Shown piece after piece: positions 3,537-56,121 of a stretch of DNA of 64,000 nucleotides. Made by a program: the position numbers and the translations under genes. Under the pieces are notes generated by a model that did not search any database, was not told the origin of the DNA, and worked only from the letters and a program-made list of their open reading frames with translations. Source of the stretch: Macrostomum lignano (Eukaryota); assembly GCA_002269645.1 (NCBI GenBank), contig NIVC01000412.1, forward strand, positions 931,296-995,295, given 5' to 3'. Each line of letters begins with the position of its first letter. Within the stretch, counting starts at the first letter, position 1.

Positions 3537-5171
3537 AAAATCATAGAAGCGTCATGTAAAAAATCATAGAAGCGTCATGTAAACAATCATGAAAGCGTCA
3601 TGAAAAAATCATAGAAGCGTCGTGTAAACAATCATAGAAGCGTAATGTAGAGAATCATAGAAGCGTCATGTAAAAAATCATAGGAGCGTCATGTAAACAA
3701 TCAAAGAAGCGTCATGTAAAAAATCATAGAAGCGTCATGTAAAAAATCATAGAAGCGTCATGTAAACAATCATAGAAGCGTCATGAAAAAATCATAGAAG
3801 CGTCATGTAAAAAATCAAAGAAGCGTCATGTAAAAAATCATAGAAGCGTCATGTAAACAATCATAGAAGCGTCATGTAAACAATCATATAAGCGTCATGT
3901 ACAAAAGCATAGAAGCGTCATGTAAAAAAGCATAGAAGCGTCATGTAAACAATCATAGAAGTGTCATGTAAACAATCATATAAGTGTCATGTAAAAAAGC
4001 ATAGAAGCGTCATGTAAATAATTATAGAAGCGTCATGTAAAAAATCATAGAAGCGCCATGAAAAAGTCATAGAAGCGTCATGTAAAAAATAATAGAAGCA
4101 TCATGTAAACAATCATGAAAGTGTCATGTAAAAAAATCATAGAAGCGTCATGTAAACAATCATGAAAGCGTCATGAAAAAAATCATAGAAGCATCGTGTA
4201 AACAATCATAAAAGCGTAATGTAGAGAATCATAGAAGCGTCATGTAAAAAAATCATAGAAGCCTCATGTAGAGAATCATAGAAGCGTCATGTAAAAAATC
4301 ATAGAAGCGTCATGTAAACAATCAAAGAAGCGTCATGTAAAAAATCATAGAAGCGTCATGTAAACAATCATAGAAGCGTCATGAAAAAATCATAGAAGCG
4401 TCATGTAAAAAATCAAAGAAGCGTCATGTAAAAAATCATAGAAGCGTCATGTAAACAATCATAGAAGCGTCATGTAAACAATCATATAAGCGTCATGTAC
4501 TAAAGCATAGAAGCGTCATGTAAAAAAGCATAGAAGCGTCATATAAACAATCATAGAAGCGTCATGTAAACAATCATATAAGCGTCATGTAAAAAAGCAT
4601 AGAAGCGTCATATAAACAATTATAGAAGCGTCACGTAAAAAATGATAGAAGCGCCATGAAAAGTCATAGAAGCGTCATGTAAAAAATAATAGAAGCATCA
4701 TGTAAACAATCATGAAAGCGTCATATAAAAAAATCATAGAAGCGTCATGTAAACAATCATGAAAGCGTCATGTAAAAAATCATCGAAGCGTCAGTTAAAA
4801 AATCATAAAAGCGGCATGTAAAAAATCATATAAGCGTCATATAAAAAATCATAGAAGCGTCATGTAAACAATCATAGAAGCGTCATGTAAACAATCATAG
4901 AAGCGTCAAGTAAACAATCATAAAAACATCATGTAAACAATCATAGAAGCGTCAAGTAAACAATCATAAAAACATCATGTAAACAATCATAGAAGCGTCA
5001 TCTAACAATCATAGAAGCGTCATGTAAACAACCATAGAAGCGTCATGTAAAAAATCATAGAAGCCTTATATAAAAACTAATGGAAGCGTCATTTGAGAAA
5101 TCATAGAAGCGTCATGTAAAAAATCATAGAAGCGTCATGTAAACAATTATAGAAGCGTCATGTAAACAATC
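3537..5171. repeat. 23-bp satellite A (ATCATAGAAGCGTCATGTAAAAA), left of the LINE
   Basis: Direct inspection; roughly 70 units. Confidence 0.97.
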
Positions 5172-5272
5172 GCAGACTTGACTTTTGACTTAGCTGCAGG
5201 GCTGTCCCGGAGGGGACACAGCGGGAAGGCGCGGGCGCCCATTCCGCTAGTCCCTGAACGGCCGACGCGTCG

Positions 5273-8200
5273 CTATGGACGGAGGGTTGGCGCCGCCCAG
5301 GGAGGTCCCCCAGTGTCGCCAGCAGCTATGGTGCTCTCTGGAAAGGAGAGTTCAGCCCTGCGGGTGGCCCGAAGGTAGCGCATGAGCTGATTAAAGTTTT
5401 CGGGTTTGCACGCTTCAGTAATAGATGTGTGTGGCCCGAGGTAAGTGAGTCTGGCCCGCGTGAAGGCGGGACAGATGCTGACGAAATGCTCAGCGGTTTC
5501 GTCACCTGAGTTGCAGAAACTACAGGTGGCGTTGGTGGCGTTGCCCTGCAGGTACTGGTGCCTGGAGAAGCAGCCGTGACCAGAGAGGGTCATGGTGGCA
5601 GCCCGGATGTCTCTGCGCGAGAGGCGCAAGAGGAGCTTCCGGAGCTGGTGAGAGGGCTGAGGGACAGCGCCTCTGGATTGCCTGCAGTTCGTGCGGTTCG
5701 CCCAAGTCGAGCGGTGCTGAGTCCTGATCCACGCTTTGATGCGCGAGTCGATGACACAGCCAGGAATCGGGACAAGAGGTTCGGGGCCGAGAGAGGAGCC
5801 GGAGGCACCAACTTTTGCAAGGGTGTCAGCCAACTCATTTCCTCGGATCCCCACATGCCCCGGAACCCACTTAAGGGTAATTTTGTTGGCGGAACCCAAC
5901 GCATTGAGGAGTTTGATACAGTCAAGGACTGTAGCAGAGTTGGTGCTGCAGCCACTGATGGCGTGCAAGGCAGCTTGGCTGTCCGAATGGAAAATGATGT
6001 TCTTACCAGTAACGCCAGTGGCGAGAAGCTCTGCAGTGCAGGAGCTGATGGCCAGAACTTCATTTTGGAAAACACTGGAGTTGACCCCAGTGTATTGAGC
6101 GTGGGTAGCGATGACCCTCCCATTCAGAAAGATTCCAACACCAAAGCCGGTGTTGGCTGACTGCTTAGAACCGTCGGTGTAGCAATGAAGCTCACCAGGG
6201 TTCCAATGGTCATTGATGTTATCGCGCGAGTCGATAGCTACGGAGTAGCGCTGTCTCAGGTTGAGCGTTGAGGCAATGCCATCGGTGAAGACGCGATTGG
6301 CCTGACACTCGTTGAGAAAGTTGAGGCACAGATCGCTATGCGGGACAAGGTTCCGCTTAGCAGGTGCTCTCATGTAAATGAATTTGACGCCGGCATCAAT
6401 TAGACGCCGCGTCGTTCTAGCCGCCTTACCCCTGATGAAGAGGTCAAGAGGCGGAAGATTAAGAAAGGCCCCCATGCCAGCAAAGGGCGTGTACCTGGTG
6501 GCGTTGCAGATAAGCCTACACGCTCTGCCTTGGATCGTGTTGAGCAGGTCTGCATGGCTTTTGACCTGGGTAGCGCTAACCCAGACAACAGAGGCGTACG
6601 TAATGGCAGGTCTAACTGCGGAAGTATAGATCCACCAAAGCCGCTTTGGGGATAGACCCCAAGAAGTGCCAAGTGCTCGTCGGAGCTGGGCCAGGATGGC
6701 TGAGGCACGCTTAGCTTTTGCTTTCACGTGGAAGGACCAGTTGAGCCGGTGGTCAAGTGTGACCCCGAGACATCTGGTCTGGTGCGCGAAGGCAATATCT
6801 CTGCCGTAGAGCTGCAGAGGACGTATGTTCCAGCGTAGTCTGCTGGTAAACATAATGGCAACGGTTTTGGGCTCAGAGAGTTCCAAACCATTGTCATTGG
6901 CCCAGGATTCTGCTTTGCGGATAAAGCTCTGCATCAGATCCCTGAGCGTGCTGGGAGACGGTCCTGCCACAATGGCCGTGACGTCATCAGCATACCCGAC
7001 TTTGAAGACGGGGTCAGGTCGGGAGTCACTCAGAAGAGCGTCCATGACCAGGTTCCAGAGCGTCGGGGTGAGGACTCCGCCTTGGGGTCCACCCTTACAG
7101 ACTCTGGTGGAGGCAGTTTGCCCAAGAAGTTGGGCAGTGACCGTACGGTTGGAGATCATGTACATGATCCACCGTATGAGGGTAGCATGAGCTTTGCGAT
7201 TTTGAAGGGCCCTCTGAAACGCTTCAAAGATAACGTTGTCGAAGGCGCCAACAATGTCAAGAAAGAGAGCCAGGGCGTAACCGTCACCCAGTACCGCCCG
7301 TTCAATCTTTTCGACAATCGCATGCAGGGCGCTGTCAGTCGACCTCCCGGTACGGAAGGCGTGCTGATTATTGCTGAGGGGCATCGCTGTCAGCTCGCAG
7401 GAGAGCAGCCGCCAGAGAATAAGCCTCTCAGTGAGCTTAAGCATTGCTGACGTTAAGCTAATTGGCCGGAAGGCCTTGACGCTTTGGTAGTCACCCTTCC
7501 CAGGTTTGGGAATAAAGACTACTCGAGCTTCAGTCCAGCTTTTGGGAACGTATCCCAGCTGGATAGAGGCCCGCATAAGATTGCGGGTGAGTCTCAGGAA
7601 CGAGGGTATCTTGGCTGCTTCACGAAGGAGAACAGGGTAGATACCATCAGGTCCAGGAGATTTGAAGGGTTTGAAGGTTCTGACCGCACGAGCGATTAGG
7701 TCTTCAGTGACAATGCCCGCCGCTAGGGTGGCTCCATCCATCGAATGGTTGGGCTCCGGTCTAGCAGTAGGTACCCTCGGGAAGAATGTGCTAAGCATAT
7801 GCTGAAGCACTTCTTCAGGGTCTTTAGTAAGAGAGCCATCATCTTTTTTGATCATGGCTAATTTGGACATTTTGTCCATTGTAAGGGCCTTGACAAGCCT
7901 AGAAGTAGGTCTGTCTTGATCCAATTCATTGCAGAATTGGCGCCACTTACATTCCTTGGCCTTGCGCACTTCAGATTTGAAATTGCGGGAGGCTTGCCGG
8001 AAAAGCTCCATGTCCTCCGGGTTTCCGGTCTTCATGGCACGGCGATGAAGGCTTTTGGCCTTCCGCCTGAGTTTCCCCAGCTCCGGGTTCCACCACGGCG
8101 CCGAGGTCTTGCCTCTGTAGGCGCGAGCAGGACAAGCCGCTTCGTAGGCTGCAATAATGCAACCTGTCAGCGTCTCAGCCATATGATCCACATCCTCGCA

Positions 8201-9013
8201 GGTCTCAATCGGACGTAAGTCCGTGAGTTCCTGCAGGTGCAGATCAAGGGCAGCCTTGTAGGCCGCCCAATCAGTGTTGCGGATATTGCGTCTCCAAGTG
8301 ATCGGAGACTGGGTTTTAGTGTCCGCGATATTAAAGGCAATAAAGCAGTGGTCAGACAGGGAGGGCTCCTCAGACCAGACTCTCCACTCCTTGACTCTGT
8401 CAAAGAGTCTTGGGGTAACGAGTGTGGCGTCGAGGACCTCGGTCCATCTGCCATTATTAAAGGTAGGAGTGCTGCCGCGGTTGCAGAGCATGAGGTTTGT
8501 GTTAGAGATGAGGGCCAGAAGCTCCTCTCCTCTAGTGTTGGTATCTTTGCTGCCCCAGTGCTTGTGGTGCGCGTTGAGGTCGCCCCCTAAGCACAGCTCA
8601 GCGTTCTGGGACTCGCAGTACTGCGCAAGGCGCAGTAAACTCTCGGGAGCAGGGTCTCTGTCGCCTGGGATATAAACCGAGGCAACAAGACACGTACGCG
8701 GAGAGAAATGATTAGATTGGATGACGCAAAGGTCTCCATCAGAGAGATCAGTCCTCAGCCAAGCCTGGAGATGGCTAGCAGCGAGGATAGCCGCTCTAGG
8801 GCGGCTGTTCCCCGGGCCACACACATAAAAATCAGAGTAGCCAGAGGGAATGTTGGGCAACTTACCGTTGCGCATCCAGGGTTCCTGGATCAGGATGAGG
8901 CCTGGCCTGTACAGCTCAGCAATCTTCATCAGATTTACTGACGCAGATACGCAATGCTGTAAATTTATTTGCAGACAGAATGTCGCTCCTTTGGCAGCGT
9001 GGAGCTTAGTCAT
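5273..9013 (-). CDS. Retrotransposon ORF2: AP endonuclease, reverse transcriptase, RNase H, CCHC finger (1246 aa)
   Basis: EN motifs LQINL/IQEPW, GDLNAHH, SDH; RT motifs KSPGPDGI, FRPISL, PQGGVLTP, YADD; RNase H motifs YTDGSK, HSDSQAAL, WVPGHVGIRGNELAD; zinc finger CSFC-x8-H-x4-C. Confidence 0.97.
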   Translation of the reverse strand: MTKLHAAKGATFCLQINLQHCVSASVNLMKIAELYRPGLILIQEPWMRNGKLPNIPSGYSDFYVCGPGNSRPRAAILAASHLQAWLRTDLSDGDLCVIQSNHFSPRTCLVASVYIPGDRDPAPESLLRLAQYCESQNAELCLGGDLNAHHKHWGSKDTNTRGEELLALISNTNLMLCNRGSTPTFNNGRWTEVLDATLVTPRLFDRVKEWRVWSEEPSLSDHCFIAFNIADTKTQSPITWRRNIRNTDWAAYKAALDLHLQELTDLRPIETCEDVDHMAETLTGCIIAAYEAACPARAYRGKTSAPWWNPELGKLRRKAKSLHRRAMKTGNPEDMELFRQASRNFKSEVRKAKECKWRQFCNELDQDRPTSRLVKALTMDKMSKLAMIKKDDGSLTKDPEEVLQHMLSTFFPRVPTARPEPNHSMDGATLAAGIVTEDLIARAVRTFKPFKSPGPDGIYPVLLREAAKIPSFLRLTRNLMRASIQLGYVPKSWTEARVVFIPKPGKGDYQSVKAFRPISLTSAMLKLTERLILWRLLSCELTAMPLSNNQHAFRTGRSTDSALHAIVEKIERAVLGDGYALALFLDIVGAFDNVIFEAFQRALQNRKAHATLIRWIMYMISNRTVTAQLLGQTASTRVCKGGPQGGVLTPTLWNLVMDALLSDSRPDPVFKVGYADDVTAIVAGPSPSTLRDLMQSFIRKAESWANDNGLELSEPKTVAIMFTSRLRWNIRPLQLYGRDIAFAHQTRCLGVTLDHRLNWSFHVKAKAKRASAILAQLRRALGTSWGLSPKRLWWIYTSAVRPAITYASVVWVSATQVKSHADLLNTIQGRACRLICNATRYTPFAGMGAFLNLPPLDLFIRGKAARTTRRLIDAGVKFIYMRAPAKRNLVPHSDLCLNFLNECQANRVFTDGIASTLNLRQRYSVAIDSRDNINDHWNPGELHCYTDGSKQSANTGFGVGIFLNGRVIATHAQYTGVNSSVFQNEVLAISSCTAELLATGVTGKNIIFHSDSQAALHAISGCSTNSATVLDCIKLLNALGSANKITLKWVPGHVGIRGNELADTLAKVGASGSSLGPEPLVPIPGCVIDSRIKAWIRTQHRSTWANRTNCRQSRGAVPQPSHQLRKLLLRLSRRDIRAATMTLSGHGCFSRHQYLQGNATNATCSFCNSGDETAEHFVSICPAFTRARLTYLGPHTSITEACKPENFNQLMRYLRATRRAELSFPESTIAAGDTGGPPWAAPTLRP

Positions 9014-9052
9014 ACTGTATTAAATGCAATATCTGGCTAGAGCCCAGGGTCA

Positions 9053-10558
9053 TCAAGGAGACTTGGACAACAGATCGTCCTCGTCCCAGGCCGCTGGGGC
9101 TTGACTGGGAGATGGGAGTTGGTCGACGTCCATGGCCTCCTCACCCCCACCGGCCCCCCCAGCAGACTCCTCAGGCTCCGATGACAGGATGGAGGAAGCT
9201 TCCTCACCTGCATCTTTACCTTCAGACCCCACCAAGGTGGCCGAGGAGAGCTCGGATTCCGAAGACCCGGCCTCGTCCTCAACTCCTTCTCCGACTGGCA
9301 GGTTTGGTTCCCGGGGCTCGGCCGGAGCCGTTACCGCGGTCGCCGAACTGCTGCTAGCAGAGGGGCGAGATGCAGCTTTGGCTTTGGGATCGGCTTGCGC
9401 CTTTCCTTGGGCCTTAGACTGCGCCCCGCTCTTGCCGGAGATGCCGGGGTTGGCAGTAGCCTTCCCTTTGGCAGACTTTCCTCGGCGCAACTTGAGCTTG
9501 AGGGCACCCAGCTGGAAAGAGGATCCATTAGGGTACCGACTCGCCCAAGTGCTGGAAAGGCCGAGGACAATTGAGTTGCCCGTCTCCCCCCTGCGGACTT
9601 TACGGTGATACACCAGTCCACTAGCAGGGAGGTCGGGGTTCAGACGCAGTAGGACCCGGCGAATAACGTCTGGTCCAGCTGCGGTGCTCTTAGCAGGGAC
9701 GAAAACCACATAGGGTATCGTCTTTGGGCGCTGGCCCTCGCGAAGAAAAAGAGCTCCGCCAAGGTCAGCATCCAAGGAGACCGTCGGTAGCCGCTGGAGC
9801 AGCCGCCGAGCGTCCTCCTCGCTGCTAGGAGCAATAAGAACGAATGTGCTTCGCAGCACCATCCGCTCAACGCCGATGGAGATTCCCTCCTCGACAGTCA
9901 GCTCAATCAGATAGGAGTCAACAGCACTCCACACTTTTTGAAGCTGATCAGTGGTCCAGTCCTGGTCGCGACCTTGGATGATCACTCCCGGGATTTTGGC
10001 CTTGGCCTTCGCCGCAAAGGTAGCTCCCGAAGGAACCTCCTTGTTGGCAGTGGCCATTTGTTGCGCCGTGGTTTCGGCCTCAGCAGCCGCGGCAGCAGCT
10101 CCAGGGAGCGCCGCCGCTGAACTACTGGAGCTTCCACCGGCCGGCCCGCCTGGTTGCCTTGGGACTCCAGTCGCTTCAGCATCCATGGTGGACGCCGCCG
10201 CTTTGGCCCCCGCAGCTCCCTTCTTGGCCTGCCTTTTGGCGCGTTGTTTAGCGCGTTTGCGCTCAAGCCGAGCCCGCTGAGCTTCATCGGATCTGCCAGA
10301 TTTGGCCGGTCCTTTAGGCTCAGAGCTCGCGGTTCCCTTAGATCCACCAGCGGAGCTGGCAGGTGTTAGGGTATTTTGAGTTTGGTAGCTCTGGTCGGAT
10401 CTGCCAGCAGAGCCAGCCGGTCCTTCCTTTGCCACAGTTGAATCAGTCGGTTGGGATCTGCCAGCAGGGCCGGCCGGTCCTTCGGACTGAGGTTGGGGTT
10501 TAGAAGGGTCCCCATCCCTAGAAATAGCTTGTTTATCCATAGTCGGCTCGAAGGCCAT
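9053..10558 (-). CDS. Retrotransposon ORF1 (501 aa from the first ATG), DUF4780-like gag equivalent
   Basis: First ATG at 10558 in TTATCATGGCC context (the ORF track starts at an upstream GTG). Core YVVFVP...IRRVLLRLNPDLP...LGALKLKL resembles LOA-type ORF1; low-complexity flanks and acidic C-terminus; no CCHC knuckle. Confidence 0.82.
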   Translation of the reverse strand: MAFEPTMDKQAISRDGDPSKPQPQSEGPAGPAGRSQPTDSTVAKEGPAGSAGRSDQSYQTQNTLTPASSAGGSKGTASSEPKGPAKSGRSDEAQRARLERKRAKQRAKRQAKKGAAGAKAAASTMDAEATGVPRQPGGPAGGSSSSSAAALPGAAAAAAEAETTAQQMATANKEVPSGATFAAKAKAKIPGVIIQGRDQDWTTDQLQKVWSAVDSYLIELTVEEGISIGVERMVLRSTFVLIAPSSEEDARRLLQRLPTVSLDADLGGALFLREGQRPKTIPYVVFVPAKSTAAGPDVIRRVLLRLNPDLPASGLVYHRKVRRGETGNSIVLGLSSTWASRYPNGSSFQLGALKLKLRRGKSAKGKATANPGISGKSGAQSKAQGKAQADPKAKAASRPSASSSSATAVTAPAEPREPNLPVGEGVEDEAGSSESELSSATLVGSEGKDAGEEASSILSSEPEESAGGAGGGEEAMDVDQLPSPSQAPAAWDEDDLLSKSP

Positions 10559-10834
10559 GATAAAAGGTTGGTGGGCTACCCTCAAAGGGGCGCGGTACCC
10601 ACCCGGCCGCTCCACCTGACCGGGCAGTAGGCCAATAGCACCCTCAAGGCTGGCCCGACACCAGGAGGGGGACCGCTTGCGACCGGACTACTCCCCGGCC
10701 TTCCAGCCCATCGGCACGGTCAACACCTTAGGCATTAGAGAGTACGTTGAGCAGTACCACGGCCTGCAGGTTGGCGAGCCAGACCCGCATACCCAAATTC
10801 GGCCGAAGCCACTGGATAGGGTCGCCAGCGCCGG

Positions 10835-11076
10835 AGCCCAGTCTGTCCAGCAGCCCTAGGGACTGCCTTGAACACACGCGGGGACGAGTACCCTGGGTCG
10901 ACTTGCGAGACAGCGTGGGGGGGGGTCTGCGGCTGCCAGAGGCAAATAGAGGGTGCAGACCTCCCACCAGCCTTGACCTGCTGAAGATAGGGGCAGGCGT
11001 GAAGCATCGCAGACCTTAGCCCATGGGCCTAGTCTGTCTCATACTTCACTGGCATGCTGAATACGCCTTCGCGTGC
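10835..11076 (-). ncRNA. HDV-like self-cleaving ribozyme at the retrotransposon 5' end
   Basis: P1 GCACGCG/CGCGUGU (G1-U wobble); P2 GACCCA/UGGGCU; P3 GGG/CCC; L3 UACUCGU; P1.1 AC/GU; P4 hairpin GGCAGUCC/GGGCUGCU; J4/2 CAGAC with the catalytic C; J1/2 about 170 nt. Confidence 0.86.
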
Positions 11077-11084
11077 AAAAAAAA

Positions 11085-11840
11085 AAGCGTCATGTAAAAA
11101 ATCATAGAAGCGTCATGTAAACAATCATAGAAGCGTCATGTAAACAATCATAGAAGCGTCATGTAAAAAATCTTAGAAGCGTCATTTAAAAAATCATAGA
11201 AGCGTCATGTAAACAATCATAGAAGCGTCATGAAAAAATCATAGAAGCGTCATGTAAAAAATCATAGAAGCGTCATGAAAAAATCATAGAAGCGTCATGT
11301 AAAAAATCATAGAAGCGTTGTGTAAACAATCATAGAAGCGTCATGTGAAAAATCATAGAAGCGCCATGTAAAAAAGCATAGAAGCGTCATGTAAAGAATC
11401 ATAGAAGCGCCATGTAAAAAATCATAGAAGCGCCATGTAAAAAATCATAGAAGCGTCATGTAAACAATCATGAAAGCGTCATGTAAAAAATCATCAAAGC
11501 GTCAGTTAAAAAATCATAGAAGCGCCATGTAAAAAATCATATAAGCGTCATATAAAAAATCATATAAGCGTCATGTAAACAATCATAGAAGCGTCATGTA
11601 AAAAATCATAGAAGCGTCATGTAAAAAATCATAGAAGTGTCATGTAAACAATCATAGAAGCGTCATGAAAAAATCATAGGAGCGTCATGTAAAAAATCAA
11701 AGAAGCGTCATGTAAAAAATCATAGAAGCGTCATGAAAAAGTCATAGAAGCGTCATGTAAAAAATCATAGAAGCGTCATGTAAAAAATCATAGAAGCGTC
11801 ATGTAAACAATCATGAAAGCGTCATGTAAAAAATCATACT
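11085..11840. repeat. 23-bp satellite A, right of the LINE
   Basis: Same unit resumes after an A10 run. Confidence 0.97.
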
Positions 11841-19388: not shown

Positions 19389-21385
19389 GTCCCGCTGGCT
19401 GGTAAGTTTCCCGCTGGGATCCAACTCAGATTGTCATCCGACAGTCGACTGACGAAAATCAACACGATTTATCTACGATTTTCATCTTTGTCCGACTTTC
19501 AACGATGAAAAAGGGTGGGGAAAACGGTTCGAAATTTATCTTTAACCCGACATTGTCTCTATTTTGTCGATCGATTCCTCAAAATCAAACCGAATTCGTC
19601 GCTGACTCGCCGATTTTCGGTCAAAACCGTAGCGACAAGTCAGACTTTCGCTCGAAATAACTCCCGACATTCGTCCGCCACTTACTTGTAGATAAAAACA
19701 ATCCGTTTGGGCAATAAAAGACTCAAGGGTGTCTTAAGACTGTGAGACATTGATTGCTAAAAGACTCAACAAGCGAACGAAAAATAACCACTAAATAGTG
19801 GACCATACATTACGATAAAATTGGCAGCTGAAAACATGGCAGTACAGGAGGCGCACAAAAGTACTAATCATAGCCATACACTGCCATCAATTATTCACAG
19901 ATTAACATGTCATGTGTAAGACATGCTAAATCTGTATCTGACTGAGCGGCTAACTAAGCGGAACAACTTTGTCGACTGCGGCCTGCAAGCTAGAGAATGC
20001 AATTACTCAGTGCAAAATTTAAAAACAGTTCGATCATGAATAGTGCAGTTGTCAGATTCATAAGAATGAAAGTTTGTGATGTTGTACGCTCGTATAGCTG
20101 AAACAATTTTAAGCAAATACGACTTTTAAACTGCTGGGCAAGCTCCGGCTCCTGGGGGTTAGCGCATGTATTCTTCCTAGGACCCAATCGGATCAGGAAA
20201 ATTATCTAGTTCCATGTCTTTATCGGTACCTGCAGTACGCTGCTGAAGGGCCTGTATCTCACGCTGAGTGTCGCCAATTGCTGTGAAGCACGCTGAAGTT
20301 CTCTGCAAATTGAAGAGGGCCAGATAGCACACAGCCCAGCTCGGCTTGGGCTAGCCAAGTACATACCAAGCCCAGCTTCCATTTTCGCCTTTAATTGAAC
20401 AAGGCTATCAATGCCAAAGTTGGCGTCATTGACTTCTTTGAAGCTTGTGCATCATCGACTTCTTCGAGAGGCAGAAGCGTCAAGACCCTTGTAGTTTGTT
20501 GAGGTTGTTTCTCGACTGTTGTATCGTTGGTGGTCAGCGTAATGATGCGGTCTTTTGAGCACGTGTCTGAATCCGATTTTGTCAGCAGGTTCTGCAATTC
20601 GAAAGGATAAATTAATAGTTTTTTTCACTGATAACACTAATAACTTTTTAAATAAATCTAACGACAATCTGAATCGATATTGGAATCAATAAATAAAAAT
20701 ATCTGTTCAAGCAATGAAGAAAATTTTAATGTTTTCACGAAGTTTCAAAGCAAGAACACTTAGCACAGGGTGTTCCAGTGACATATCTATTCAATAGATA
20801 GAGCTGCTATTGTAAAAGCCAATTCCTAGTCTTTCAGATGAGTATTAATGGACGAGAAAATTTTAAAATGCGACCTGTCACTATACCATTTCTTACATCT
20901 GAAATTAGGATTGGATTAGCATGTTGCTTGTCAATAACAACGCACTGTTATTTGGAGCAGCTTCAGAAAAAAATAAGTTATTTTTGGATTACTATAAAAA
21001 GTAGCACGAACATTTAAAAACTGATTTACAACATGCTAGGTTATAAATCGAGTGACAGCTACTCTACGTTTTACTTGACCCAGGTAACAAAAAATATAAT
21101 CAGTTATAGCTCAATTTCAATGGTTTGAATTGGATGGATCGATGAATCAATGGATCGATAATGCTCCGACAGGTTGCAAAAGGTCGGAGTTGGAGCCCAA
21201 CAGGTGCTGGGCCAGCCTCCCAGATCCCCAGTTGCCGAGCCAGCCTCCCAGATCCTGAGTTGCTGGGGCCATCCTTTTAGATTCTCAGGGGTTGCTAGGC
21301 CTCCATTCCAGACCCTCAGTCCTCAGTATCCAAGGGCGAGCATGTTCCTGAAGCCACGTCAGCAGCACTGCAACCCCAATCGCAG

Positions 21386-22172
21386 GTACTACGTGCTGAT
21401 TCACGACAGCCTAGAAGGCGACCAGCAGCGGGCGGACTCCACCCTCACCGCCATGCGCAGCACATACGGTGCCGCCGCCTGTCACCTGTTGCTCATCAAC
21501 TCCAGGCCGGCGCACCTGCAGTCGGAGAGTAGCGGTGGCGCCCCCGCTCCGCCAGATCCGTGGGCTCAGCACCTGCCGCCATCCCGCCAGCTGCCGGCCA
21601 GTCAGCAACATCAGCATCAGTTTCACCAGCAGCAGCATCAGGTTGTTCAAGAGGCTTCATCGCCTACAGATCAGCAGCCGCCGCAGCATCCGCTCGACTA
21701 CGGCTGGTCGTCAACCGATTCCGGCGACGTCGCTGGACCCGACGGTGGCGTCGGAGGCGGTGCGCCGGGCGGCGGCGTCGTCGGTCACGGCGCCTGGCTG
21801 AGCGCCGACGATCACAACCGACTGCGAGTGATGATTCTGGAGCTGGTCAACCGGGCTCTGATGCCGTGGGTTGAGAAGACTCTAAAGCTGTTAAACGAAC
21901 AGATTGCGTCGAGAATGCGTGGCAAAGGATTCCTCGGTGGCGCTAAAAAATGGTTCTCGGTTGGCGGCGGCGGCGGCAGCGGCGGTAGCGGCAGCGGCGG
22001 CGGCGCCGGTAAAAGCGGCGGTCAGCATGCCGGCTCTGCCGGAGCCTCGTCGGTGGTGTACTCAAGCGACGCTCCGGAGCTGCAGTTGCGCCGGTACGCG
22101 GATTTGGCGTTCCTGTTCCAGCAGTACGAAGTGGCGCACCAGGCTTACCAGCAGCTGAAGAAGGATTTTCAG
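21386..22172 (+). CDS. TRAPPC8: TRAPPC8 exon 3
   Basis: KYYVLIHD...CHLLLINSR...ELQLRRYADLAFLFQQYEVAHQAYQQLKKDFQ (Trs85 domain). Acceptor CGCAG, donor CAG|GTTGAT; phases join exons 2 and 4. Confidence 0.93.
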
Positions 22173-22233
22173 GTTGATTTATAACTATGATTTATAATTG
22201 CGGCTAGTACTCTCAAGTCCAATCTAAAATACG

Positions 22234-23392: not shown

Positions 23393-23410
23393 GTGAGACT
23401 GCGGTAATAG

Positions 23411-23994
<584 letters not shown>

Positions 23995-25945: not shown

Positions 25946-26059
25946 AGACAGACAGACAGACAGACAGATAGACACTAAGACAGACAGACTGACTGACAGA
26001 CAGACAGACAGACAGACACACACACACACACACACAGGAAGACAGACAGACAGACACTA

Positions 26060-26110
<51 letters not shown>

Positions 26111-26125
26111 TACACACACACATGA

Positions 26126-26158
<33 letters not shown>

Positions 26159-26411
26159 GGTAGACACACACACACACACACGGGAAGAAAGACAGACAGA
26201 CAGACAGACAGACAGACAGGCAGACAGACAGACAGACAGATAGACAGACAGACAGACAGGTACACACACACACACACACAGGAAGACAGACAGACAGACA
26301 GACAGACCGACAGACAGACAGGCAGGCAGACAGACAGACCGACAGACAGACAGGCAGGCAGACAGACAGACCGACAGACAGACAGGCAGGCAGACAGACA
26401 GACAGGCACTA

Positions 26412-26444
<33 letters not shown>

Positions 26445-26451
26445 GGCAGGC

Positions 26452-26488
<37 letters not shown>

Positions 26489-26523
26489 CTAAGACAGACA
26501 GACAGACAGGCAGGCAGACAGAC
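25946..26523. repeat. (GACA)n array with CACTAA and CA-run variants
   Basis: Direct inspection. Confidence 0.97.
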
Positions 26524-27561
26524 ACTAACCACACCACACAAATACCCCAACAGTCATAAGTAGTACGCTAAGCACAATGTTCAAAGGCTTTGTGTACTGC
26601 ATCCCGACAAAATAAATTTATCACTAAAAAGATGCTTTGCAAGGTACTCACAACAGTAGCTTATGAAAACTGTAAATGAAATGAAACCAAATGAAGCTGT
26701 GCTGTGAGTTGCGGTTAGAAATGCACAAAAAATGTCATGGGAAATTTCCTACTGTTGACATGGTCTGCCTGTTGTTTTTCAAGCTGACATTGCGGTCACC
26801 GATGAATGCTTTTTGTAACCCTAATCCTAAGCCTAACCTTTTTAAGCTCTTGTTTCTGTCTGTTTCTTTTCCCTGTCAAATCCAGCATGTGTAGAGAGGG
26901 CTTTGAATTTGTCTGCAGTTTTAAGCATTTTCATGCGCACTCAGCACCTGCCGGTTGATGATTGGGGTTGGACTTCTGTTTACCTTAATTTTGTCTTTTT
27001 TCTGCGCATGTCTAACAGAAGTGGAGAAATCGTCACGTATTCCTATATGCTAATGCTTCATCCGGCTCGTTTTTTAATTATGCTGTTTTACAGCTTGAGC
27101 TGATCTGCTCTCTCTCTCTCCCATAGAAAGTGCGTCGCCCGTAACAATTCGTTCGCAAATGTACTTTCCTGCGCTATTTTCTGTTACTGAATTTATTAGC
27201 ATTTTGATTGTAGGATATTGTGCGGCTTCTAGCGTTTCTCTGTCTCCCTTGTCTTTTTATCTCCTATCTATCTTCTACTCTCACTCTGCCTCTCCTCTCC
27301 CTCTCTTCTATCCTTTTCCTGTCTCCCTCTCCTCTCTCTACTCTCCTTCTCTCCTCTTCTCTCTCTGTCCCTAGTCCCTCTCTCCTCCCTCTTTTTACAT
27401 TCTCAGTCTCTTCACTCCATCTCCTCATTTTCCTCTCCCTCCTATTTTTGCGTATCTTTCTCTACTCCCATTCTTTTATCTCCCATCTCTCCCAGCTTGT
27501 ATTGATGCTTGCTTATCCCCTATTTCTTCCATCACTATTATTTCTCTTTCCCATCTTTACC

Positions 27562-30165
<2,604 letters not shown>

Positions 30166-38639: not shown

Positions 38640-38966
38640 CTAGCAATCTACGCCCCCCGTTGGGGAGCCAAAGAAATGCAATACACGTTTTTTAATAAGC
38701 TACATGTAGCCTTGAAATCTTAAAAAATCTCCTGTCAAACCTTGCAAGCCTTGACATGTCAGTAATTCCCCCCCCACAAGCTTTAACATATCAACTCCCC
38801 CCTTGACATCTCAGCAATGCCCCAATAAGCCTTGGAAATCTAAAAATATCTGTCAACCTTCTAACCCTAAACCTAGCCTAACCCTAACCCTAACCCTAAC
38901 CCTAACCCTAACCTAACCCTAAAGCATTGAAATTTCAGTAATAATTCTCTCTAAGAGTCATTATAG
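38640..38966 (-). mobile_element. 5'-truncated Helitron fragment, inverted homolog of 12647-12913, with (TTAGGG)n
   Basis: On the minus strand GCTCCCC-AAC-GGGGGGC, 8 nt, CTAG|T. Body aligns with 12647-12913. Sits at an A|T step within the 32-bp satellite. Confidence 0.75.
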
Positions 38967-45495: not shown

Positions 45496-45605
45496 ATGGT
45501 ACATGGTTCACAGTTTTCAAGCCTCAATTTTCAACGCCTGTAACAAATTGCGAATTGCAGCCGGCTGAGCAGTATATAATTGTCTAAACAGCTACATTGC
45601 GTCAC

Positions 45606-46742
45606 ATGCTTCTCACAATAGCCCTGTTCCTGCTGTGCTGCTCGCTCATCCTATTGATCCGCGCTGCCGCCTCCCTGGCCGATCGGCGGGGAGTCTGCAG
45701 CTTCGCAGTTGAAGAGCAGCAGCAGCAGCAGAAGCAACGGCCAGAAGAAGACCAGAAGGAAGCGGAAGATCCTGGAATCAAGCTGCTCGATCCGCAGGTT
45801 GCAGCGGCTGTGGCCGAACTGGCCGAGCTGGTCTTTCATCGGCAGCTGGCCGGTGAAGCGTGGTGTCCGGCCAGCCTGTCCAGACGTTTTCGTCGCCTTA
45901 TTCAGCGGTTCCTGTTGGCCGCGGCCGTTCGGCTGGCTCGGGTCGACTGGCACCGCCTGTGCCATCGCCGACTGCTGCCGCTGGCCGCGGCGCACGCTCT
46001 CCAGCTTCGCCGATGCCAGCAGAGCCGACAGCAACTCGGACGGCCGGCTCGGCCAGCCGCCAAGCTGCCCGTGCCGGAGTTCCTTCGCAACGACGCCGAC
46101 GAGCGTCGACTGCTGCAAGCCGTCGCCGGCCGCCTGCTGGACAGTCTGGACTCCGAGGCCGCCGCTCTCGGCCGCTGCCTGCCTGTGCGTGTGGCTTTGA
46201 CTGACTTGCTGGCCCGGTACGTCCTCCAGCCGGCCATGGACTCGGCCACCTGTCCGGAAGTCCTCGCCCGTCTCGTCTCCGGCCACTTGGCCGAGCGCAG
46301 TCGTCGGATTCGATACGAACGAATTGCGGCCGGCAGTTTTGAAGATTTCGTACGGCAAATTTTACAATGCGAATCGGCGCCAGCTCTGCGCCAATTGCGC
46401 GCCAGTGTGCGCGCCGAAATTTTGCACGCTAGCGCGCTGCGAACTCTGCAGCGTCAACAGCAGCAAGGCGCCCAGGCTGCTGTACAGTATTCATCTAAAG
46501 CTGGCCAGCTGATGAACCGCGATTTGCGACGCTACCTGAACCAGCTGGGCCAGTGCGAGGCGCTCTGCCAGCAGCGGCTGGCTGGCCTGCTGTCAGACAA
46601 GTCCGTCGGAGTCGGCGGCATTGGCGATGGTGGCGGAGGCGGCGGCTGTGACGACGGCTCAGGCGAGTCGTACAGTAGAGAATTTGACGATCTCGAAGAC
46701 GTGGAAGCGGAGCGAGCGTCTTTGCAAGTTTACTCACTGCAG
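45606..46742 (+). CDS. SNX25: SNX25-like sorting nexin exon 1 (TM anchor plus PXA domain)
   Basis: Hydrophobic N-terminus; PXA; SFEDFVRQI...LRQLRASVRAEI...DLRRYLNQL...CQQRL resembles the SNX25/snazarus post-PXA block; donor CAG|GTAGGG. An upstream exon cannot be excluded. Confidence 0.8.
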
Positions 46743-46813
46743 GTAGGGTGCGAAACCGAACTCTGTTCAATCGATTAACACTCACTTAACAACACTACAC
46801 CTTTAACTGCCAG

Positions 46814-54792: not shown

Positions 54793-56121
54793 TCAGTCAT
54801 CTTCCATGGCTGGCACTTCAGCCGAGATCAGCGCGGCCACTACCTCGCGGCTGTCCCGGTCGGCCACCTCAGTCGACGGCGCAGCCTTTGCAGCTGTTGT
54901 TGTCATCCGCAGCATCGGCAGCTCTGCTGACTGCTCCGCCTCGGGTCTCCCCTGCTGACGTCTTCGGGCTCTCTTGCCATCGCCGTTGACGCTTGAACCG
55001 TTGGACGACCTGCGCCACGGACAAGCGTTCATCACGCGGCGTCTGAACGCAGTTGAGGAGATAAAATAAGCCAGAAAGTTGGTGGCATTGTTGGCGAACA
55101 TAAGCGTCTTCAGAGCATTGTTTGTGACACCGCTGATCGAGTTTTTATCGCCGTAGACTTTCAGCTTCTGACCAATGGAAGCTGGCAAGGTGGTGATAAT
55201 GTGGATCACGGTGAGCACAGCCAGGATCTTCATGATACTCTCCGGCTTGCGACGAGCAGCCTCTCGTTTCTTCTCAACGTTGCTGGCTGCGTTTCCAGCC
55301 GATGCGCCCTGACGCTTCGGGTTGAGAACCTCCTGGTCAGCCGCTTTGCCCTTATCGGCCCGCTGGTTTGTGGCAGTCGGCTGAGCATGGCGACGCATTG
55401 CAGCGCTCTGACGTCGCATGGCGGTATAGATGTAGATGTTGCAAAACAGCAGAATAGTGTAGGGCAGAATCAGGTAGGTGACCATGTCCAGGTTGATGAA
55501 GAACTTCGCAAAGTCCTGATTGTAGTCGCACTTGTCCACCAGCTGGTAGTCAATGCCAGCTTCCATCTCGGCCAGGTCTGTCTCGTTCTGTTCTGTCAGG
55601 CTGGAGTTGAGCAGCCGGTAGCATTTGCTGGTGTGCAGAAAGAATGACAGCGGCATATTTTTAACCAGCAGCGCCAGCACCATCGCGCCGAACGACAGGC
55701 TAAAGTTGCGAGTAGTCAGAATCTGCTGCACCCGGTACGGGAACGCAACCACGACGAAGCGCTCAACTCCGATGGCGCACAGGGTGTACACAGCGACGTC
55801 GCTGACCGTGGCCACTACTGGCTGGTGGAAGCGGCAGATAAAAGGGTGCAGATCGCGCAAATCAATGTTAAACGTCTCCCGGATCCAGTAGCGCACCACC
55901 GCTAGGAGGAGGACTCCGCTGTCACTCAGCGCAAGGCAGACCATCAGGAAGCGAGTGGTGACTCGGTTGGACCTCTCCGTGCCTTGGATGTAGGCCGCCG
56001 CCAGGTTGCAGGGCACGCCGCCAACAATGATGACGGCGCCTAAGAGACGAATTACCCACTCAGCGATCTCCGAAGTGTTGTCTTCTGGCCGCTGACGACA
56101 GGCTCCAACTCTGTCATACAT
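54793..56121 (-). CDS. Intronless class A (rhodopsin-like) GPCR, FMRFamide/peptide-receptor-like, 442 aa
   Basis: Seven hydrophobic segments; GxxxN in TM1, LAxSD in TM2, Cys at the start of TM3, ERF in place of DRY, LPY in TM5, NxxNFxxY in TM7; N-glycosylation sites. Confidence 0.93.
   Translation of the reverse strand: MYDRVGACRQRPEDNTSEIAEWVIRLLGAVIIVGGVPCNLAAAYIQGTERSNRVTTRFLMVCLALSDSGVLLLAVVRYWIRETFNIDLRDLHPFICRFHQPVVATVSDVAVYTLCAIGVERFVVVAFPYRVQQILTTRNFSLSFGAMVLALLVKNMPLSFFLHTSKCYRLLNSSLTEQNETDLAEMEAGIDYQLVDKCDYNQDFAKFFINLDMVTYLILPYTILLFCNIYIYTAMRRQSAAMRRHAQPTATNQRADKGKAADQEVLNPKRQGASAGNAASNVEKKREAARRKPESIMKILAVLTVIHIITTLPASIGQKLKVYGDKNSISGVTNNALKTLMFANNATNFLAYFISSTAFRRRVMNACPWRRSSNGSSVNGDGKRARRRQQGRPEAEQSAELPMLRMTTTAAKAAPSTEVADRDSREVVAALISAEVPAMEDD

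What the first reader, a model, noticed from the sequence alone, without database searches (positions are those of the whole stretch)
10835..11076. HDV-like self-cleaving ribozyme whose predicted cut site is exactly the 5' end of an intact retrotransposon
Seen on the minus strand: the first 7 nt of the element (GCACGCG, 11076-11070) pair with CGCGUGU (10880-10874), including the diagnostic G1-U wobble. P3 is GGG/CCC closing L3 UACUCGU, with U20, C22, C24 and G25 in place. P1.1 shows a compensatory change: L3 A-C pairs with J1/4 G-U where HDV has CC/GG. UCAA then leads into an 8-bp P4, J4/2 is CAGAC (C75-N-R-A), and P2 is GACCCA/UGGGCU. J1/2 is a ~170-nt structured insert. Established: HDV-like ribozymes process the 5' ends of R2 and several other non-LTR elements. 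Inference: the genomic copy starts precisely at G1, so the retrotransposed RNA was probably ribozyme-cleaved, letting the element free itself from read-through or satellite transcripts. A local hairpin, ACGC-GAAG-GCGU, competes with P1 and could act as a folding switch. I know of no report for this element or host type, but cannot check that.
Basis: partly seen in the sequence, partly recalled or inferred. Interest (0 to 1): 0.86.

Follow-up and report, generated by a model that had tools for sequence, protein, structure and literature searches.

The report
HDV-like ribozyme heading a flatworm retrotransposon
The first 242 bases of an intact jumping gene (a non-LTR retrotransposon, probably in a Macrostomum-type flatworm genome) fold on paper into the known hepatitis-delta-like self-cutting RNA. 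The predicted cut lies exactly at the element's first base. This is a new example of an already known trick, not a new kind of thing.

Summary
P1 starts at the first base after the flanking 23-bp satellite plus a T10 run. One omission: P2 has an A·C mismatch.

This is not chance. None of 5000 shuffles anchored on the first 7 nt reproduced the core. A stringent descriptor hit only three sites in 992 kb, all sense-strand 5' UTRs of related elements: this one, L009 and L056.

The only alignable homologue is L001 (57% ORF2 identity). It keeps P1, P2, P1.1 and P4 through compensatory changes, and its contig begins at the aligned G1.

The element (5172-11076) is intact: ORF1, then an ORF2 with AP-endonuclease, reverse transcriptase and RNase H domains. 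It has no poly(A).

Most likely it works as in R2, SART, Baggins and L1Tc. The ribozyme would cut read-through transcripts 5' of G1 and so define the RNA that is reverse-transcribed.

Catalysis is untested, Rfam models do not detect the motif, and only one copy lies in the window.

The 170-nt J1/2 insert holds the most conserved hairpin of the 5' UTR. The competing 5' hairpin is also conserved by covariation.

Verdict: a new member of a known kind, of moderate interest.

The parts
5172..11076 (-). Intact non-LTR retrotransposon (about 5.9 kb, GC 53-63%) inserted in an AT-rich 23-bp satellite. No poly(A) tail.
   Evidence: Composition step. The same satellite lies on both sides. Two uninterrupted ORFs. 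Single copy in the window.
10835..11076 (-). Candidate HDV-like self-cleaving ribozyme, 242 nt. The predicted scissile bond is between U11077 and G11076.
11070..11076 (-). P1 5' strand, GCACGCG. G1 is the first element base.
   Evidence: Pairs with 10880-10874 over 7 bp, including the G1·U wobble. Duplex energy -10.4 kcal/mol.
11063..11074 (-). Local hairpin ACGC-GAAG-GCGU, which competes with P1.
   Evidence: -5.1 kcal/mol. L001 has CCUGC-AAUG-GCAGG in the same register, with 2 compensatory pairs.
10900..11069 (-). J1/2 peripheral domain, 170 nt and structured.
   Evidence: RNAalifold with L001 gives 34 pairs, 7 of them with both sides changed.
10999..11049 (-). Long hairpin inside J1/2 that carries GGGCUAAGGUCUG. 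It contains the best-conserved stretch of the 5' UTR.
   Evidence: BLAST of the window 5' UTR against L001 aligns only 41 nt, at 88% identity; these lie within this hairpin. Hairpin predicted.
10894..10899 (-). P2 5' strand, GACCCA.
   Evidence: Pairs with UGGGCU at 10840-10835: G·U, an A·C mismatch, then 4 bp.
10881..10893 (-). P3 (GGG/CCC) closing L3, UACUCGU. L3 A10889 and C10888 form P1.1 with U10872 and G10873.
10872..10880 (-). P1 3' strand, CGCGUGU, followed by the J1/4 GU that forms P1.1.
10849..10867 (-). P4 hairpin, 8 bp with loop CUA. It can be extended by C10870-G10847 and U10871-A10846.
10841..10848 (-). J4/2, GGACAGAC. The candidate catalytic cytosine is C10845.
   Evidence: With the extended P4, C10845 becomes the first unpaired base of J4/2. 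That is the position stated for the catalytic C in PMC10879173. Sequence read.
10835..10840 (-). P2 3' strand, UGGGCU.
9053..10558 (-). ORF1, 501 aa from the first ATG. No Pfam hit. Homologous to the ORF1 of L001, L003 and L004.
5273..9013 (-). ORF2, 1246 aa: AP endonuclease, reverse transcriptase, RNase H and a C-terminal Cys/His motif.
   Evidence: Pfam hits. The endonuclease domain is closest to the TRAS1 endonuclease in the PDB.
5172..5272 (-). 3' UTR ending ...CCCUGCAGCUAAGUCAAAAGUCAAGUCUGC(G). Blocks are conserved with L001.
11077..11086 (-). T10 run at the 5' junction. Eight of the T are not explained by the satellite unit.

Best explanation
The 5' UTR of this retrotransposon encodes a large HDV-like self-cleaving ribozyme. 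It is a nested double pseudoknot (P1, P1.1, P2, P3, P4) with a 170-nt structured J1/2 domain.

Inferred mechanism:

1. The element is transcribed as part of a longer transcript that starts upstream, in the satellite or a neighbouring unit.
2. A short 5' hairpin first holds the P1 strand while the J1/2 domain is being made.
3. Once P3/L3 and P1' emerge, the more stable P1 forms.
4. C10845 in J4/2 and a bound Mg2+ catalyse attack of the 2'-OH of U11077. The transcript is cut 5' of G11076.
5. The 5'-OH RNA that starts at G1 is translated and reverse-transcribed at a new target. New DNA copies therefore begin at G1, plus a few untemplated bases.

Shown here: the fold, its anchoring at the element terminus, and its conservation by compensatory change. 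Inferred: cleavage itself, co-transcription, and the roles of the hairpin and of J1/2.
For: - All helices and core nucleotides are present at the stated coordinates.
- Anchored shuffles: 0 of 5000 reach the L3 plus P1.1 level for the window, and 7 of 5000 for L001.
- The stringent descriptor gives 3 hits in 992 kb: window 11076(-), L009 45(+) and L056 201(+). All are sense-strand 5' UTRs upstream of ORF1.
- L001 keeps every helix with different sequence, and its contig begins at the aligned G1.
- P1.1 covaries: AC/GU in the window, CU/GG in L001, CC/GG in L009 and L056.
- Satellite phasing places the insertion boundary within 10 nt of G1.
- J1/2 is structured and conserved. Such domains are known activators (PMC4908430), and long J1/2 loops are normal in R2 (PMC3774820).
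- The same arrangement is established for R2, R4, R6, RTE, SART, Baggins and L1Tc (PMC11620745, PMC6765202, PMC3185411).
Against: - There are no cleavage data.
- No Rfam family matches, not even in the compact relative L056.
- P2 in this copy is weak: 4 contiguous bp, an A·C mismatch and a G·U.
- J4/2 is one nucleotide longer than in L001 and L009, and P1.1 includes an A-U pair.
- Covariation rests on one alignable homologue plus two analogues that were found with a descriptor which itself requires pairing.
- Only one copy is in the window, so 5' ends of other copies could not be compared.
- The T10 run leaves the exact RNA 5' end formally ambiguous.
- Looser descriptors give roughly one false hit per 15-45 kb. 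One example is 55700(-), inside a GPCR ORF.
Confidence: 0.72

Rival explanations
1. It is a conserved 5' pseudoknot that is no longer, or never was, catalytic. It would serve as a protein-binding or translation-initiation structure. Alternatively, this particular copy is a decayed ribozyme.
For: - The best-conserved part of the 5' UTR is the J1/2 hairpin, not the catalytic core.
- P2 is weak and J4/2 is atypical in this copy.
- R2 protein binds a pseudoknot within the extended ribozyme, and HDV-like ribozymes are proposed to act like IRESs (PMC6765202).
- Rfam gives no hit.
Against: - The core nucleotides are retained in the window, L001, L009 and L056: L3 U..CG, the P1.1 pairs, and a C at the start of J4/2.
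- P1 begins exactly at the element end. That placement is what a cleavage function predicts, and a binding site does not need it.
- The two roles are not mutually exclusive.
Confidence: 0.15
2. The 5' end at G1 is set by transcription initiation from an internal promoter in the first ~100 bp. The ribozyme-like fold would then be irrelevant to end definition, or only a back-up as in the L1Tc Pr77/L1TcRz dual system.
For: - L1Tc combines an internal promoter and a ribozyme in the same 77 nt (PMC3383444).
- The conserved 41-nt block at +57 to +97 could be a DNA-level promoter element.
Against: - No promoter evidence was obtained here.
- A promoter does not explain compensatory changes in four helices.
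- It also does not explain the pairing of the very first base.
Confidence: 0.1
3. It is a chance match to a permissive motif.
For: - P1 alone is unremarkable: 30% of shuffles give a 7-bp partner.
- Relaxed descriptors yield many hits.
Against: - 0 of 5000 anchored shuffles reproduce the core.
- The stringent descriptor gives no false positives in 992 kb.
- The homologue L001 preserves the fold.
Confidence: 0.03

Closest known systems
R2 retrotransposon 5' HDV-like ribozymes (Drosophila, Bombyx and other animals; putative structure for planarian Schmidtea R2)
   Same: The ribozyme sits at the 5' terminus and P1 defines the RNA 5' end. J1/2 loops are long (216-498 nt in silkmoths). P1 is 6-7 bp, and P2 often has mismatches. 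5' junctions are variable when the cut is at the element end (PMC3774820).
   Different: R2 has a single ORF with a restriction-like endonuclease and inserts in 28S rDNA. This element has two ORFs, an AP endonuclease and RNase H, and sits in a 23-bp satellite.
Ribozyme-terminated APE-type elements: SART and R6 (R1 clade), Baggins (LOA clade), RTE (Ruminski et al. 2011, as cited in PMC11620745 and PMC6765202)
   Same: These are AP-endonuclease non-LTR elements with an HDV-like ribozyme in the 5' UTR. They are thought to depend on read-through transcription. SART targets a tandem repeat (telomere). The window's endonuclease domain is closest to the TRAS1 endonuclease in the PDB.
   Different: The host is a different phylum (flatworm, versus arthropod or nematode). 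No sequence similarity of the ribozymes could be tested. The clade of this element is not resolved here.
L1Tc / ingi-clade L1TcRz (Trypanosoma cruzi)
   Same: An APE-RT-RNase H element whose first nucleotides form an HDV-like ribozyme that cleaves at +1. The same region has a second function, as the Pr77 promoter (PMC3185411, PMC3383444).
   Different: L1TcRz is compact (77 nt) with a 1-bp P1.1. Here the ribozyme is 242 nt with a 170-nt J1/2 domain and a 2-bp P1.1.
drz-Agam-2-1 and other large HDV-like ribozymes with a J1/2 (P1.2) domain
   Same: A structured peripheral domain lies between P1 and P2. It is shown to speed cleavage by bringing P1 and P2 together (PMC4908430).
   Different: Agam-2 has a 12-bp P2. 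Here P2 is short and imperfect, and the domain holds a sequence-conserved hairpin.

Membership tests
HDV-like self-cleaving ribozymes | Nested double pseudoknot in the order P1-J1/2-P2-P3-L3-P3'-P1'-P1.1-P4-J4/2-P2'. | tested here: met
   All elements are found in order at 11076-10835(-).
HDV-like self-cleaving ribozymes | P1 of 6-7 bp starting at the cleavage-site nucleotide, typically with a G1·U wobble. | tested here: met
   7 bp, with G11076·U10874.
HDV-like self-cleaving ribozymes | 3-bp P3 closing a 7-8 nt L3 with the conserved U...C-G core, and a P1.1 of 1-2 bp to the bases after P1'. | tested here: met
   GGG/CCC, L3 UACUCGU, P1.1 C-G plus A-U. The same pattern occurs in L001, L009, L056 and L030.
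HDV-like self-cleaving ribozymes | Catalytic cytosine at the first position of J4/2. | tested here: inconclusive
   C10845 takes that position only if P4 is extended by C10870-G10847 and U10871-A10846. Four bases, not three, then follow before P2' (rule from PMC10879173).
HDV-like self-cleaving ribozymes | P2 of at least 5 bp (mismatches occur in about one third of R2 ribozymes, PMC3774820). | tested here: inconclusive
   Four contiguous bp, an A·C mismatch and a G·U. L001 and L009 have 6 clean bp.
HDV-like self-cleaving ribozymes | Helices supported by compensatory change among relatives. | tested here: met
   Window versus L001: P1, P2, P1.1 and P4 are all changed and all still pair. The sample is small: one homologue and two analogues.
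HDV-like self-cleaving ribozymes | Match to a curated covariance model (Rfam HDV, CPEB3 or drz families). | tested here: not met
   No hit at the gathering threshold or at E<=10. The literature says this family is found with structure descriptors, because only about five nucleotides are conserved (PMC4870747).
HDV-like self-cleaving ribozymes | Mg2+-dependent self-scission that leaves a 5'-OH and is abolished by C-to-U at the catalytic C. | not testable with these tools
   Needs an in vitro transcription and cleavage assay.
Ribozyme-terminated non-LTR retrotransposons | Ribozyme on the sense strand at the extreme 5' end, upstream of the first ORF. | tested here: met
   G1 is the first base after the satellite and T-run. 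The first ATG of ORF1 is 518 nt downstream of G1, at 10558.
Ribozyme-terminated non-LTR retrotransposons | Genomic 5' ends of copies coincide with the cleavage site. | tested here: inconclusive
   There is one copy in the window. The L001 contig starts at the aligned G1. No further copies could be retrieved.
R1 / LOA / I group of APE-type non-LTR elements | ORF2 with an N-terminal AP endonuclease, RT, a C-terminal Cys/His motif, and RNase H (in LOA and I). | tested here: met
   Pfam Exo_endo_phos(_2), RVT_1 and RNase_H. The endonuclease domain is closest to the TRAS1 endonuclease. The exact clade is not resolved, because no reference set was available.

The most novel reading that the evidence does not exclude
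The ribozyme would be a regulated device rather than a constitutive cutter. Three observations fit this reading.

1. A 5' hairpin kept by three-way covariation (positions 3-6 pair either with 11-14 or with the distal P1') would act as a kinetic switch.
2. A sequence-conserved J1/2 hairpin carries a GCUAAGG motif that recurs near the ribozyme in distant relatives and in the 3' UTR. It would be the docking site of the element's own protein, coupling cleavage, translation and choice of template.
3. The untemplated T-run at the 5' junction, seen here and in L003, would be the footprint of A-tailing of the cDNA at a 5'-OH RNA end.
Probability: 0.15. Interest if true: 0.6.

Novelty: new member of a known kind. 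Interest (0 to 1): 0.45.

Why it matters
It extends ribozyme-defined 5' ends to an APE-RT-RNase H retrotransposon lineage in free-living flatworms. I found no report for Macrostomum, and in Schistosoma twister variants do this job instead (PMC8501958).

The element is intact and sits inside a satellite array. That makes it a tractable case for two questions: whether satellite read-through transcripts feed retrotransposition, and how a large, conserved J1/2 domain and a competing 5' hairpin tune an HDV-like ribozyme.

For annotation, the practical lesson is that Rfam models miss such ribozymes. A descriptor anchored on element termini finds them.

Tried and rejected
- **Rfam scans.** Scans of the window, of 10700-11200, and of L056, L030, L009, L001 and L003 gave no ribozyme family.
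- **Exact-protein look-ups.** The window's ORF2 and ORF1 are not on record. The P0001 contig has no DNA available.
- **ORF1 profile search.** No hits.
- **Second ORF2 profile search.** No new close relatives.
- **DNA pattern from the conserved J1/2 block in metagenomes.** No match.
- **Viral contigs.** No relatives.
- **MAFFT alignment of ribozyme cores.** It misaligned the helices, with and without trimming to equal length. I therefore did not build a covariance model or use the count of structure pairs, and tabulated the pairs by script instead.
- **Loose descriptors.** They gave too many hits to be informative.
- **Plus-strand reading of the T10.** Reading it as a poly(A) tail of a plus-strand element was rejected: both long ORFs and all domains are on the minus strand.
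- **L030 and L003.** They look related but were not counted. L030 lacks a findable P2, and L003 would need a 17-nt L3.
- **Clade assignment.** Not achieved, because no reference sequences were available. A search for DUF4780 in the literature was uninformative.

Full report
**What is in the window**

The window is animal DNA, very rich in tandem repeats (63 TRF rows). It carries a rhodopsin-type GPCR gene, a PXA-domain gene and a Trs85-like gene. Between 5172 and 11076 lies a GC-rich block (53-63% GC, against 32-35% in its flanks). The same 23-bp satellite borders it on both sides, at 3537-5171 and 11085-11838.

On the minus strand the block carries two uninterrupted ORFs.
- ORF1 is 10558-9053, 501 aa, with no Pfam family.
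- ORF2 is 9013-5273, 1246 aa, with AP endonuclease, reverse transcriptase and RNase H domains and a C-terminal Cys/His motif.

There is no poly(A) tail, and there is only one copy in the window. The closest named proteins are Macrostomum lignano predictions, 72-96% identical over partial stretches. Among solved structures, the endonuclease domain is closest to the TRAS1 endonuclease. So this is an intact non-LTR retrotransposon of the R1/LOA/I type in a Macrostomum-like flatworm genome. The exact clade was not resolved.

**Checking the observation**

- P1, GCACGCG/CGCGUGU, 7 bp with G1·U.
- P3, GGG/CCC, closing L3 UACUCGU.
- P1.1, C-G plus A-U.
- The linker UCAA, then the 8-bp P4.
- J4/2, GGACAGAC, with C10845.
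- P2, GACCCA/UGGGCU.
- J1/2, 170 nt.

Three corrections apply.
- P2 contains an A·C mismatch, leaving four contiguous pairs plus a G·U.
- J4/2 has one more base after the C than in the relatives.
- G1 is preceded by T10. Two of these T belong to the satellite unit and eight are unexplained.

Satellite phasing shows that the unit ACATGACGCTT|CTAT|GATTGTTT is interrupted. The insertion boundaries therefore lie at, or within 10 nt of, G11076 at one end, and at 5171/5172 at the other.

**Is it more than chance?**

P1 alone is not significant. Thirty percent of dinucleotide shuffles that keep the first 7 nt fixed contain a 7-bp partner. However, 6% also have an adjacent 3-bp P3 hairpin, 0.08% also have the L3 pattern, and none of 5000 reaches P1.1 or P2.

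Loose descriptors with long J1/2 give roughly one false core per 15-45 kb. One example is 55700(-), inside the GPCR ORF.

I then used a stringent descriptor. It requires:
- a G1·U wobble and a P1 of at least 7 bp;
- a P3 with at least 2 G-C pairs;
- an L3 matching U-N3-C-G;
- a 2-bp P1.1 directly after P1';
- a P2 of at least 4 bp, preceded by a C.

It gives three hits in 992 kb of window plus 84 related loci, both strands: window 11076(-), L009 45(+) and L056 201(+). All three are sense-strand 5' UTRs upstream of ORF1 of related elements.

**Comparative evidence**

The family is thinly sampled. Three protein searches yielded only five ORF2 relatives above 40% identity. Of these, only L001 (a Logan contig, 57% ORF2 identity) has a 5' UTR.

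L001 was retrieved through the protein alone. Its 5' UTR aligns with the window's through J1/2, and its first base aligns with G1. It shows the same architecture with different helix sequences:
- P1 is GCCUGC/GCAGGC. Two pairs are changed on both sides, and G·U becomes G-C.
- P2 is CUCAGA/UCUGAG. At least two pairs are changed on both sides, and the mismatch is repaired.
- P3 is unchanged.
- L3 is UCUCCGU.
- P1.1 is U·G plus C-G.
- P4 is a different 9-bp hairpin.
- J4/2 is UAGCUGC.

Two elements at 33-35% ORF2 identity, found in metagenome contigs, carry canonical versions.
- L009 has P1 GGUGAUC/GAUCACU, L3 UCCACGUU, P1.1 CC/GG, an 8-bp P4, J4/2 GCCAA, a 6-bp P2 and a 160-nt J1/2.
- L056 is compact, with a 12-nt J1/2. 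Its P1 is GGUCGACA/UGUCGACU, its L3 is UCCUCGU and its P1.1 is CC/GG.

In all of these, P1.1 is followed by a 4-5 nt A-rich linker before P4.

L030 has P1, P3, L3 and P1.1 but no recognisable P2. L003 shows long crossing pairings but would need a 17-nt L3. Neither was counted.

**The peripheral parts**

The J1/2 insert of the window and L001 folds into conserved hairpins, with 7 pairs changed on both sides. The long hairpin at 11049-10999 contains the best-conserved stretch of the 5' UTR, 88% identity over 41 nt. This stretch is better conserved than the catalytic core.

Published work shows that structured J1/2 domains accelerate HDV-like ribozymes by bringing P1 and P2 together (PMC4908430). 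It also shows that R2 protein binds a pseudoknot inside its extended ribozyme (PMC6765202). Either role is possible here.

L001 has it in the same register (-8.1 kcal/mol), with two compensatory pairs. Positions 3-6 therefore covary with two alternative partners. P1 is the more stable duplex (about -10 kcal/mol). The hairpin is thus best read as a transient co-transcriptional guard or switch. That reading is inference.

**How it most likely works**

It most likely works as in the established cases. The element is transcribed within a longer RNA, and the ribozyme cuts 5' of G1. The 5'-OH RNA serves as messenger and as template for target-primed reverse transcription, so DNA copies start at G1.

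The extra T at the junction fits the variable 5' junctions reported for R2 lineages that cut at the element end (PMC3774820). It may reflect untemplated addition to the cDNA. A similar T10 precedes the 5' end of L003. This too is inference.

**Against, and limits**

- No Rfam model matches, even in the compact L056. This is weak evidence, because the family has only about five conserved nucleotides and is found with descriptors (PMC4870747).
- This copy's P2 and J4/2 are sub-optimal, so it could be slow or inactive.
- Covariation rests on few sequences.
- Other genomic copies could not be retrieved.

**Comparison with what is known, and novelty**

HDV-like ribozymes at the 5' ends of R2, R4, R6, RTE, SART, Baggins and L1Tc are established (PMC11620745, PMC6765202, PMC3185411). 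Long J1/2 loops are normal (PMC3774820). A putative planarian R2 ribozyme structure has been published (PMC3774820). No paper in the library links Macrostomum with such a ribozyme.

The finding is therefore a new member of a known kind. Interest 0.45. Confidence that this is a genuine HDV-like ribozyme defining the element's 5' end: 0.72.

Noticed in passing
window 11077-11086 (-); L003 101-110: A run of 10 T lies directly upstream of the element's first base. Eight of them are not explained by the satellite unit, and 4 bp (CTAT) of the unit are missing at the insertion. L003, a distant relative, also has T10 right before its GC-rich 5' end. This may be untemplated addition at the cDNA end.
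   Followed up: partly
window about 11015-11027 (-) and 5180-5200 (-); L001 50-62 and about 5945-5965; L056 about 283-292; L030 about 227-236: A GCUAAGG-type motif recurs in several places: in the conserved J1/2 hairpin of the window and L001, just downstream of the ribozyme in L056 and L030, and as AGCUAAGUCAAA near the 3' ends of the window element and L001. It may be a protein-recognition motif. This was not tested.
   Followed up: partly
L003 111-320: There is a 9-bp pairing, CCGGGCUGC/GCAGCCUGG, and a crossing 10-bp pairing, CCAUGGUCAG/CUGGUCAUGG. The second covers the ORF1 AUG. 'GG UAAC' follows the P1' strand as in the other ribozymes. However, L3 would be 17 nt, so this is a non-canonical or variant ribozyme.
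   Followed up: partly
window 3537-5171 and 11085-11838: The element is embedded in one 23-bp satellite, ACATGACGCTTCTATGATTKTTT on the minus strand. Whether the family targets this satellite could not be tested. L001's 3' flank is not a satellite.
   Followed up: partly
window 38861-38922; 27564-30165; 23407-23994; 25946-26524: There is an interstitial telomere-like (CTAACC)n tract and very long tetranucleotide arrays: (TGTC) about 650 copies, (ATAG) about 150 and (AGAC) about 144. Many other minisatellites are present.
   Followed up: no
window 54793-56121 (-), 45597-46778 (+), 21174-22184 (+): Host-type ORFs: a rhodopsin-family GPCR (an uninterrupted 442-aa ORF), a PXA-domain protein and a TRAPP Trs85-like protein. 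One loose-descriptor 'ribozyme' hit at 55700(-) lies inside the GPCR ORF and is a false positive.
   Followed up: partly
window 10397-10426 and 10454-10483: A 30-nt direct repeat, 93% identical and spaced 57 nt apart, lies inside ORF1. It encodes a repeated EGPAG(P/S)AGRS peptide.
   Followed up: no
protein P0012: A public protein labelled as coming from a Gammaproteobacteria metagenome-assembled genome is a full-length APE-RT-RNase H retrotransposon ORF2, 36% identical to this one. It is probably eukaryotic contamination of that bin.
   Followed up: no
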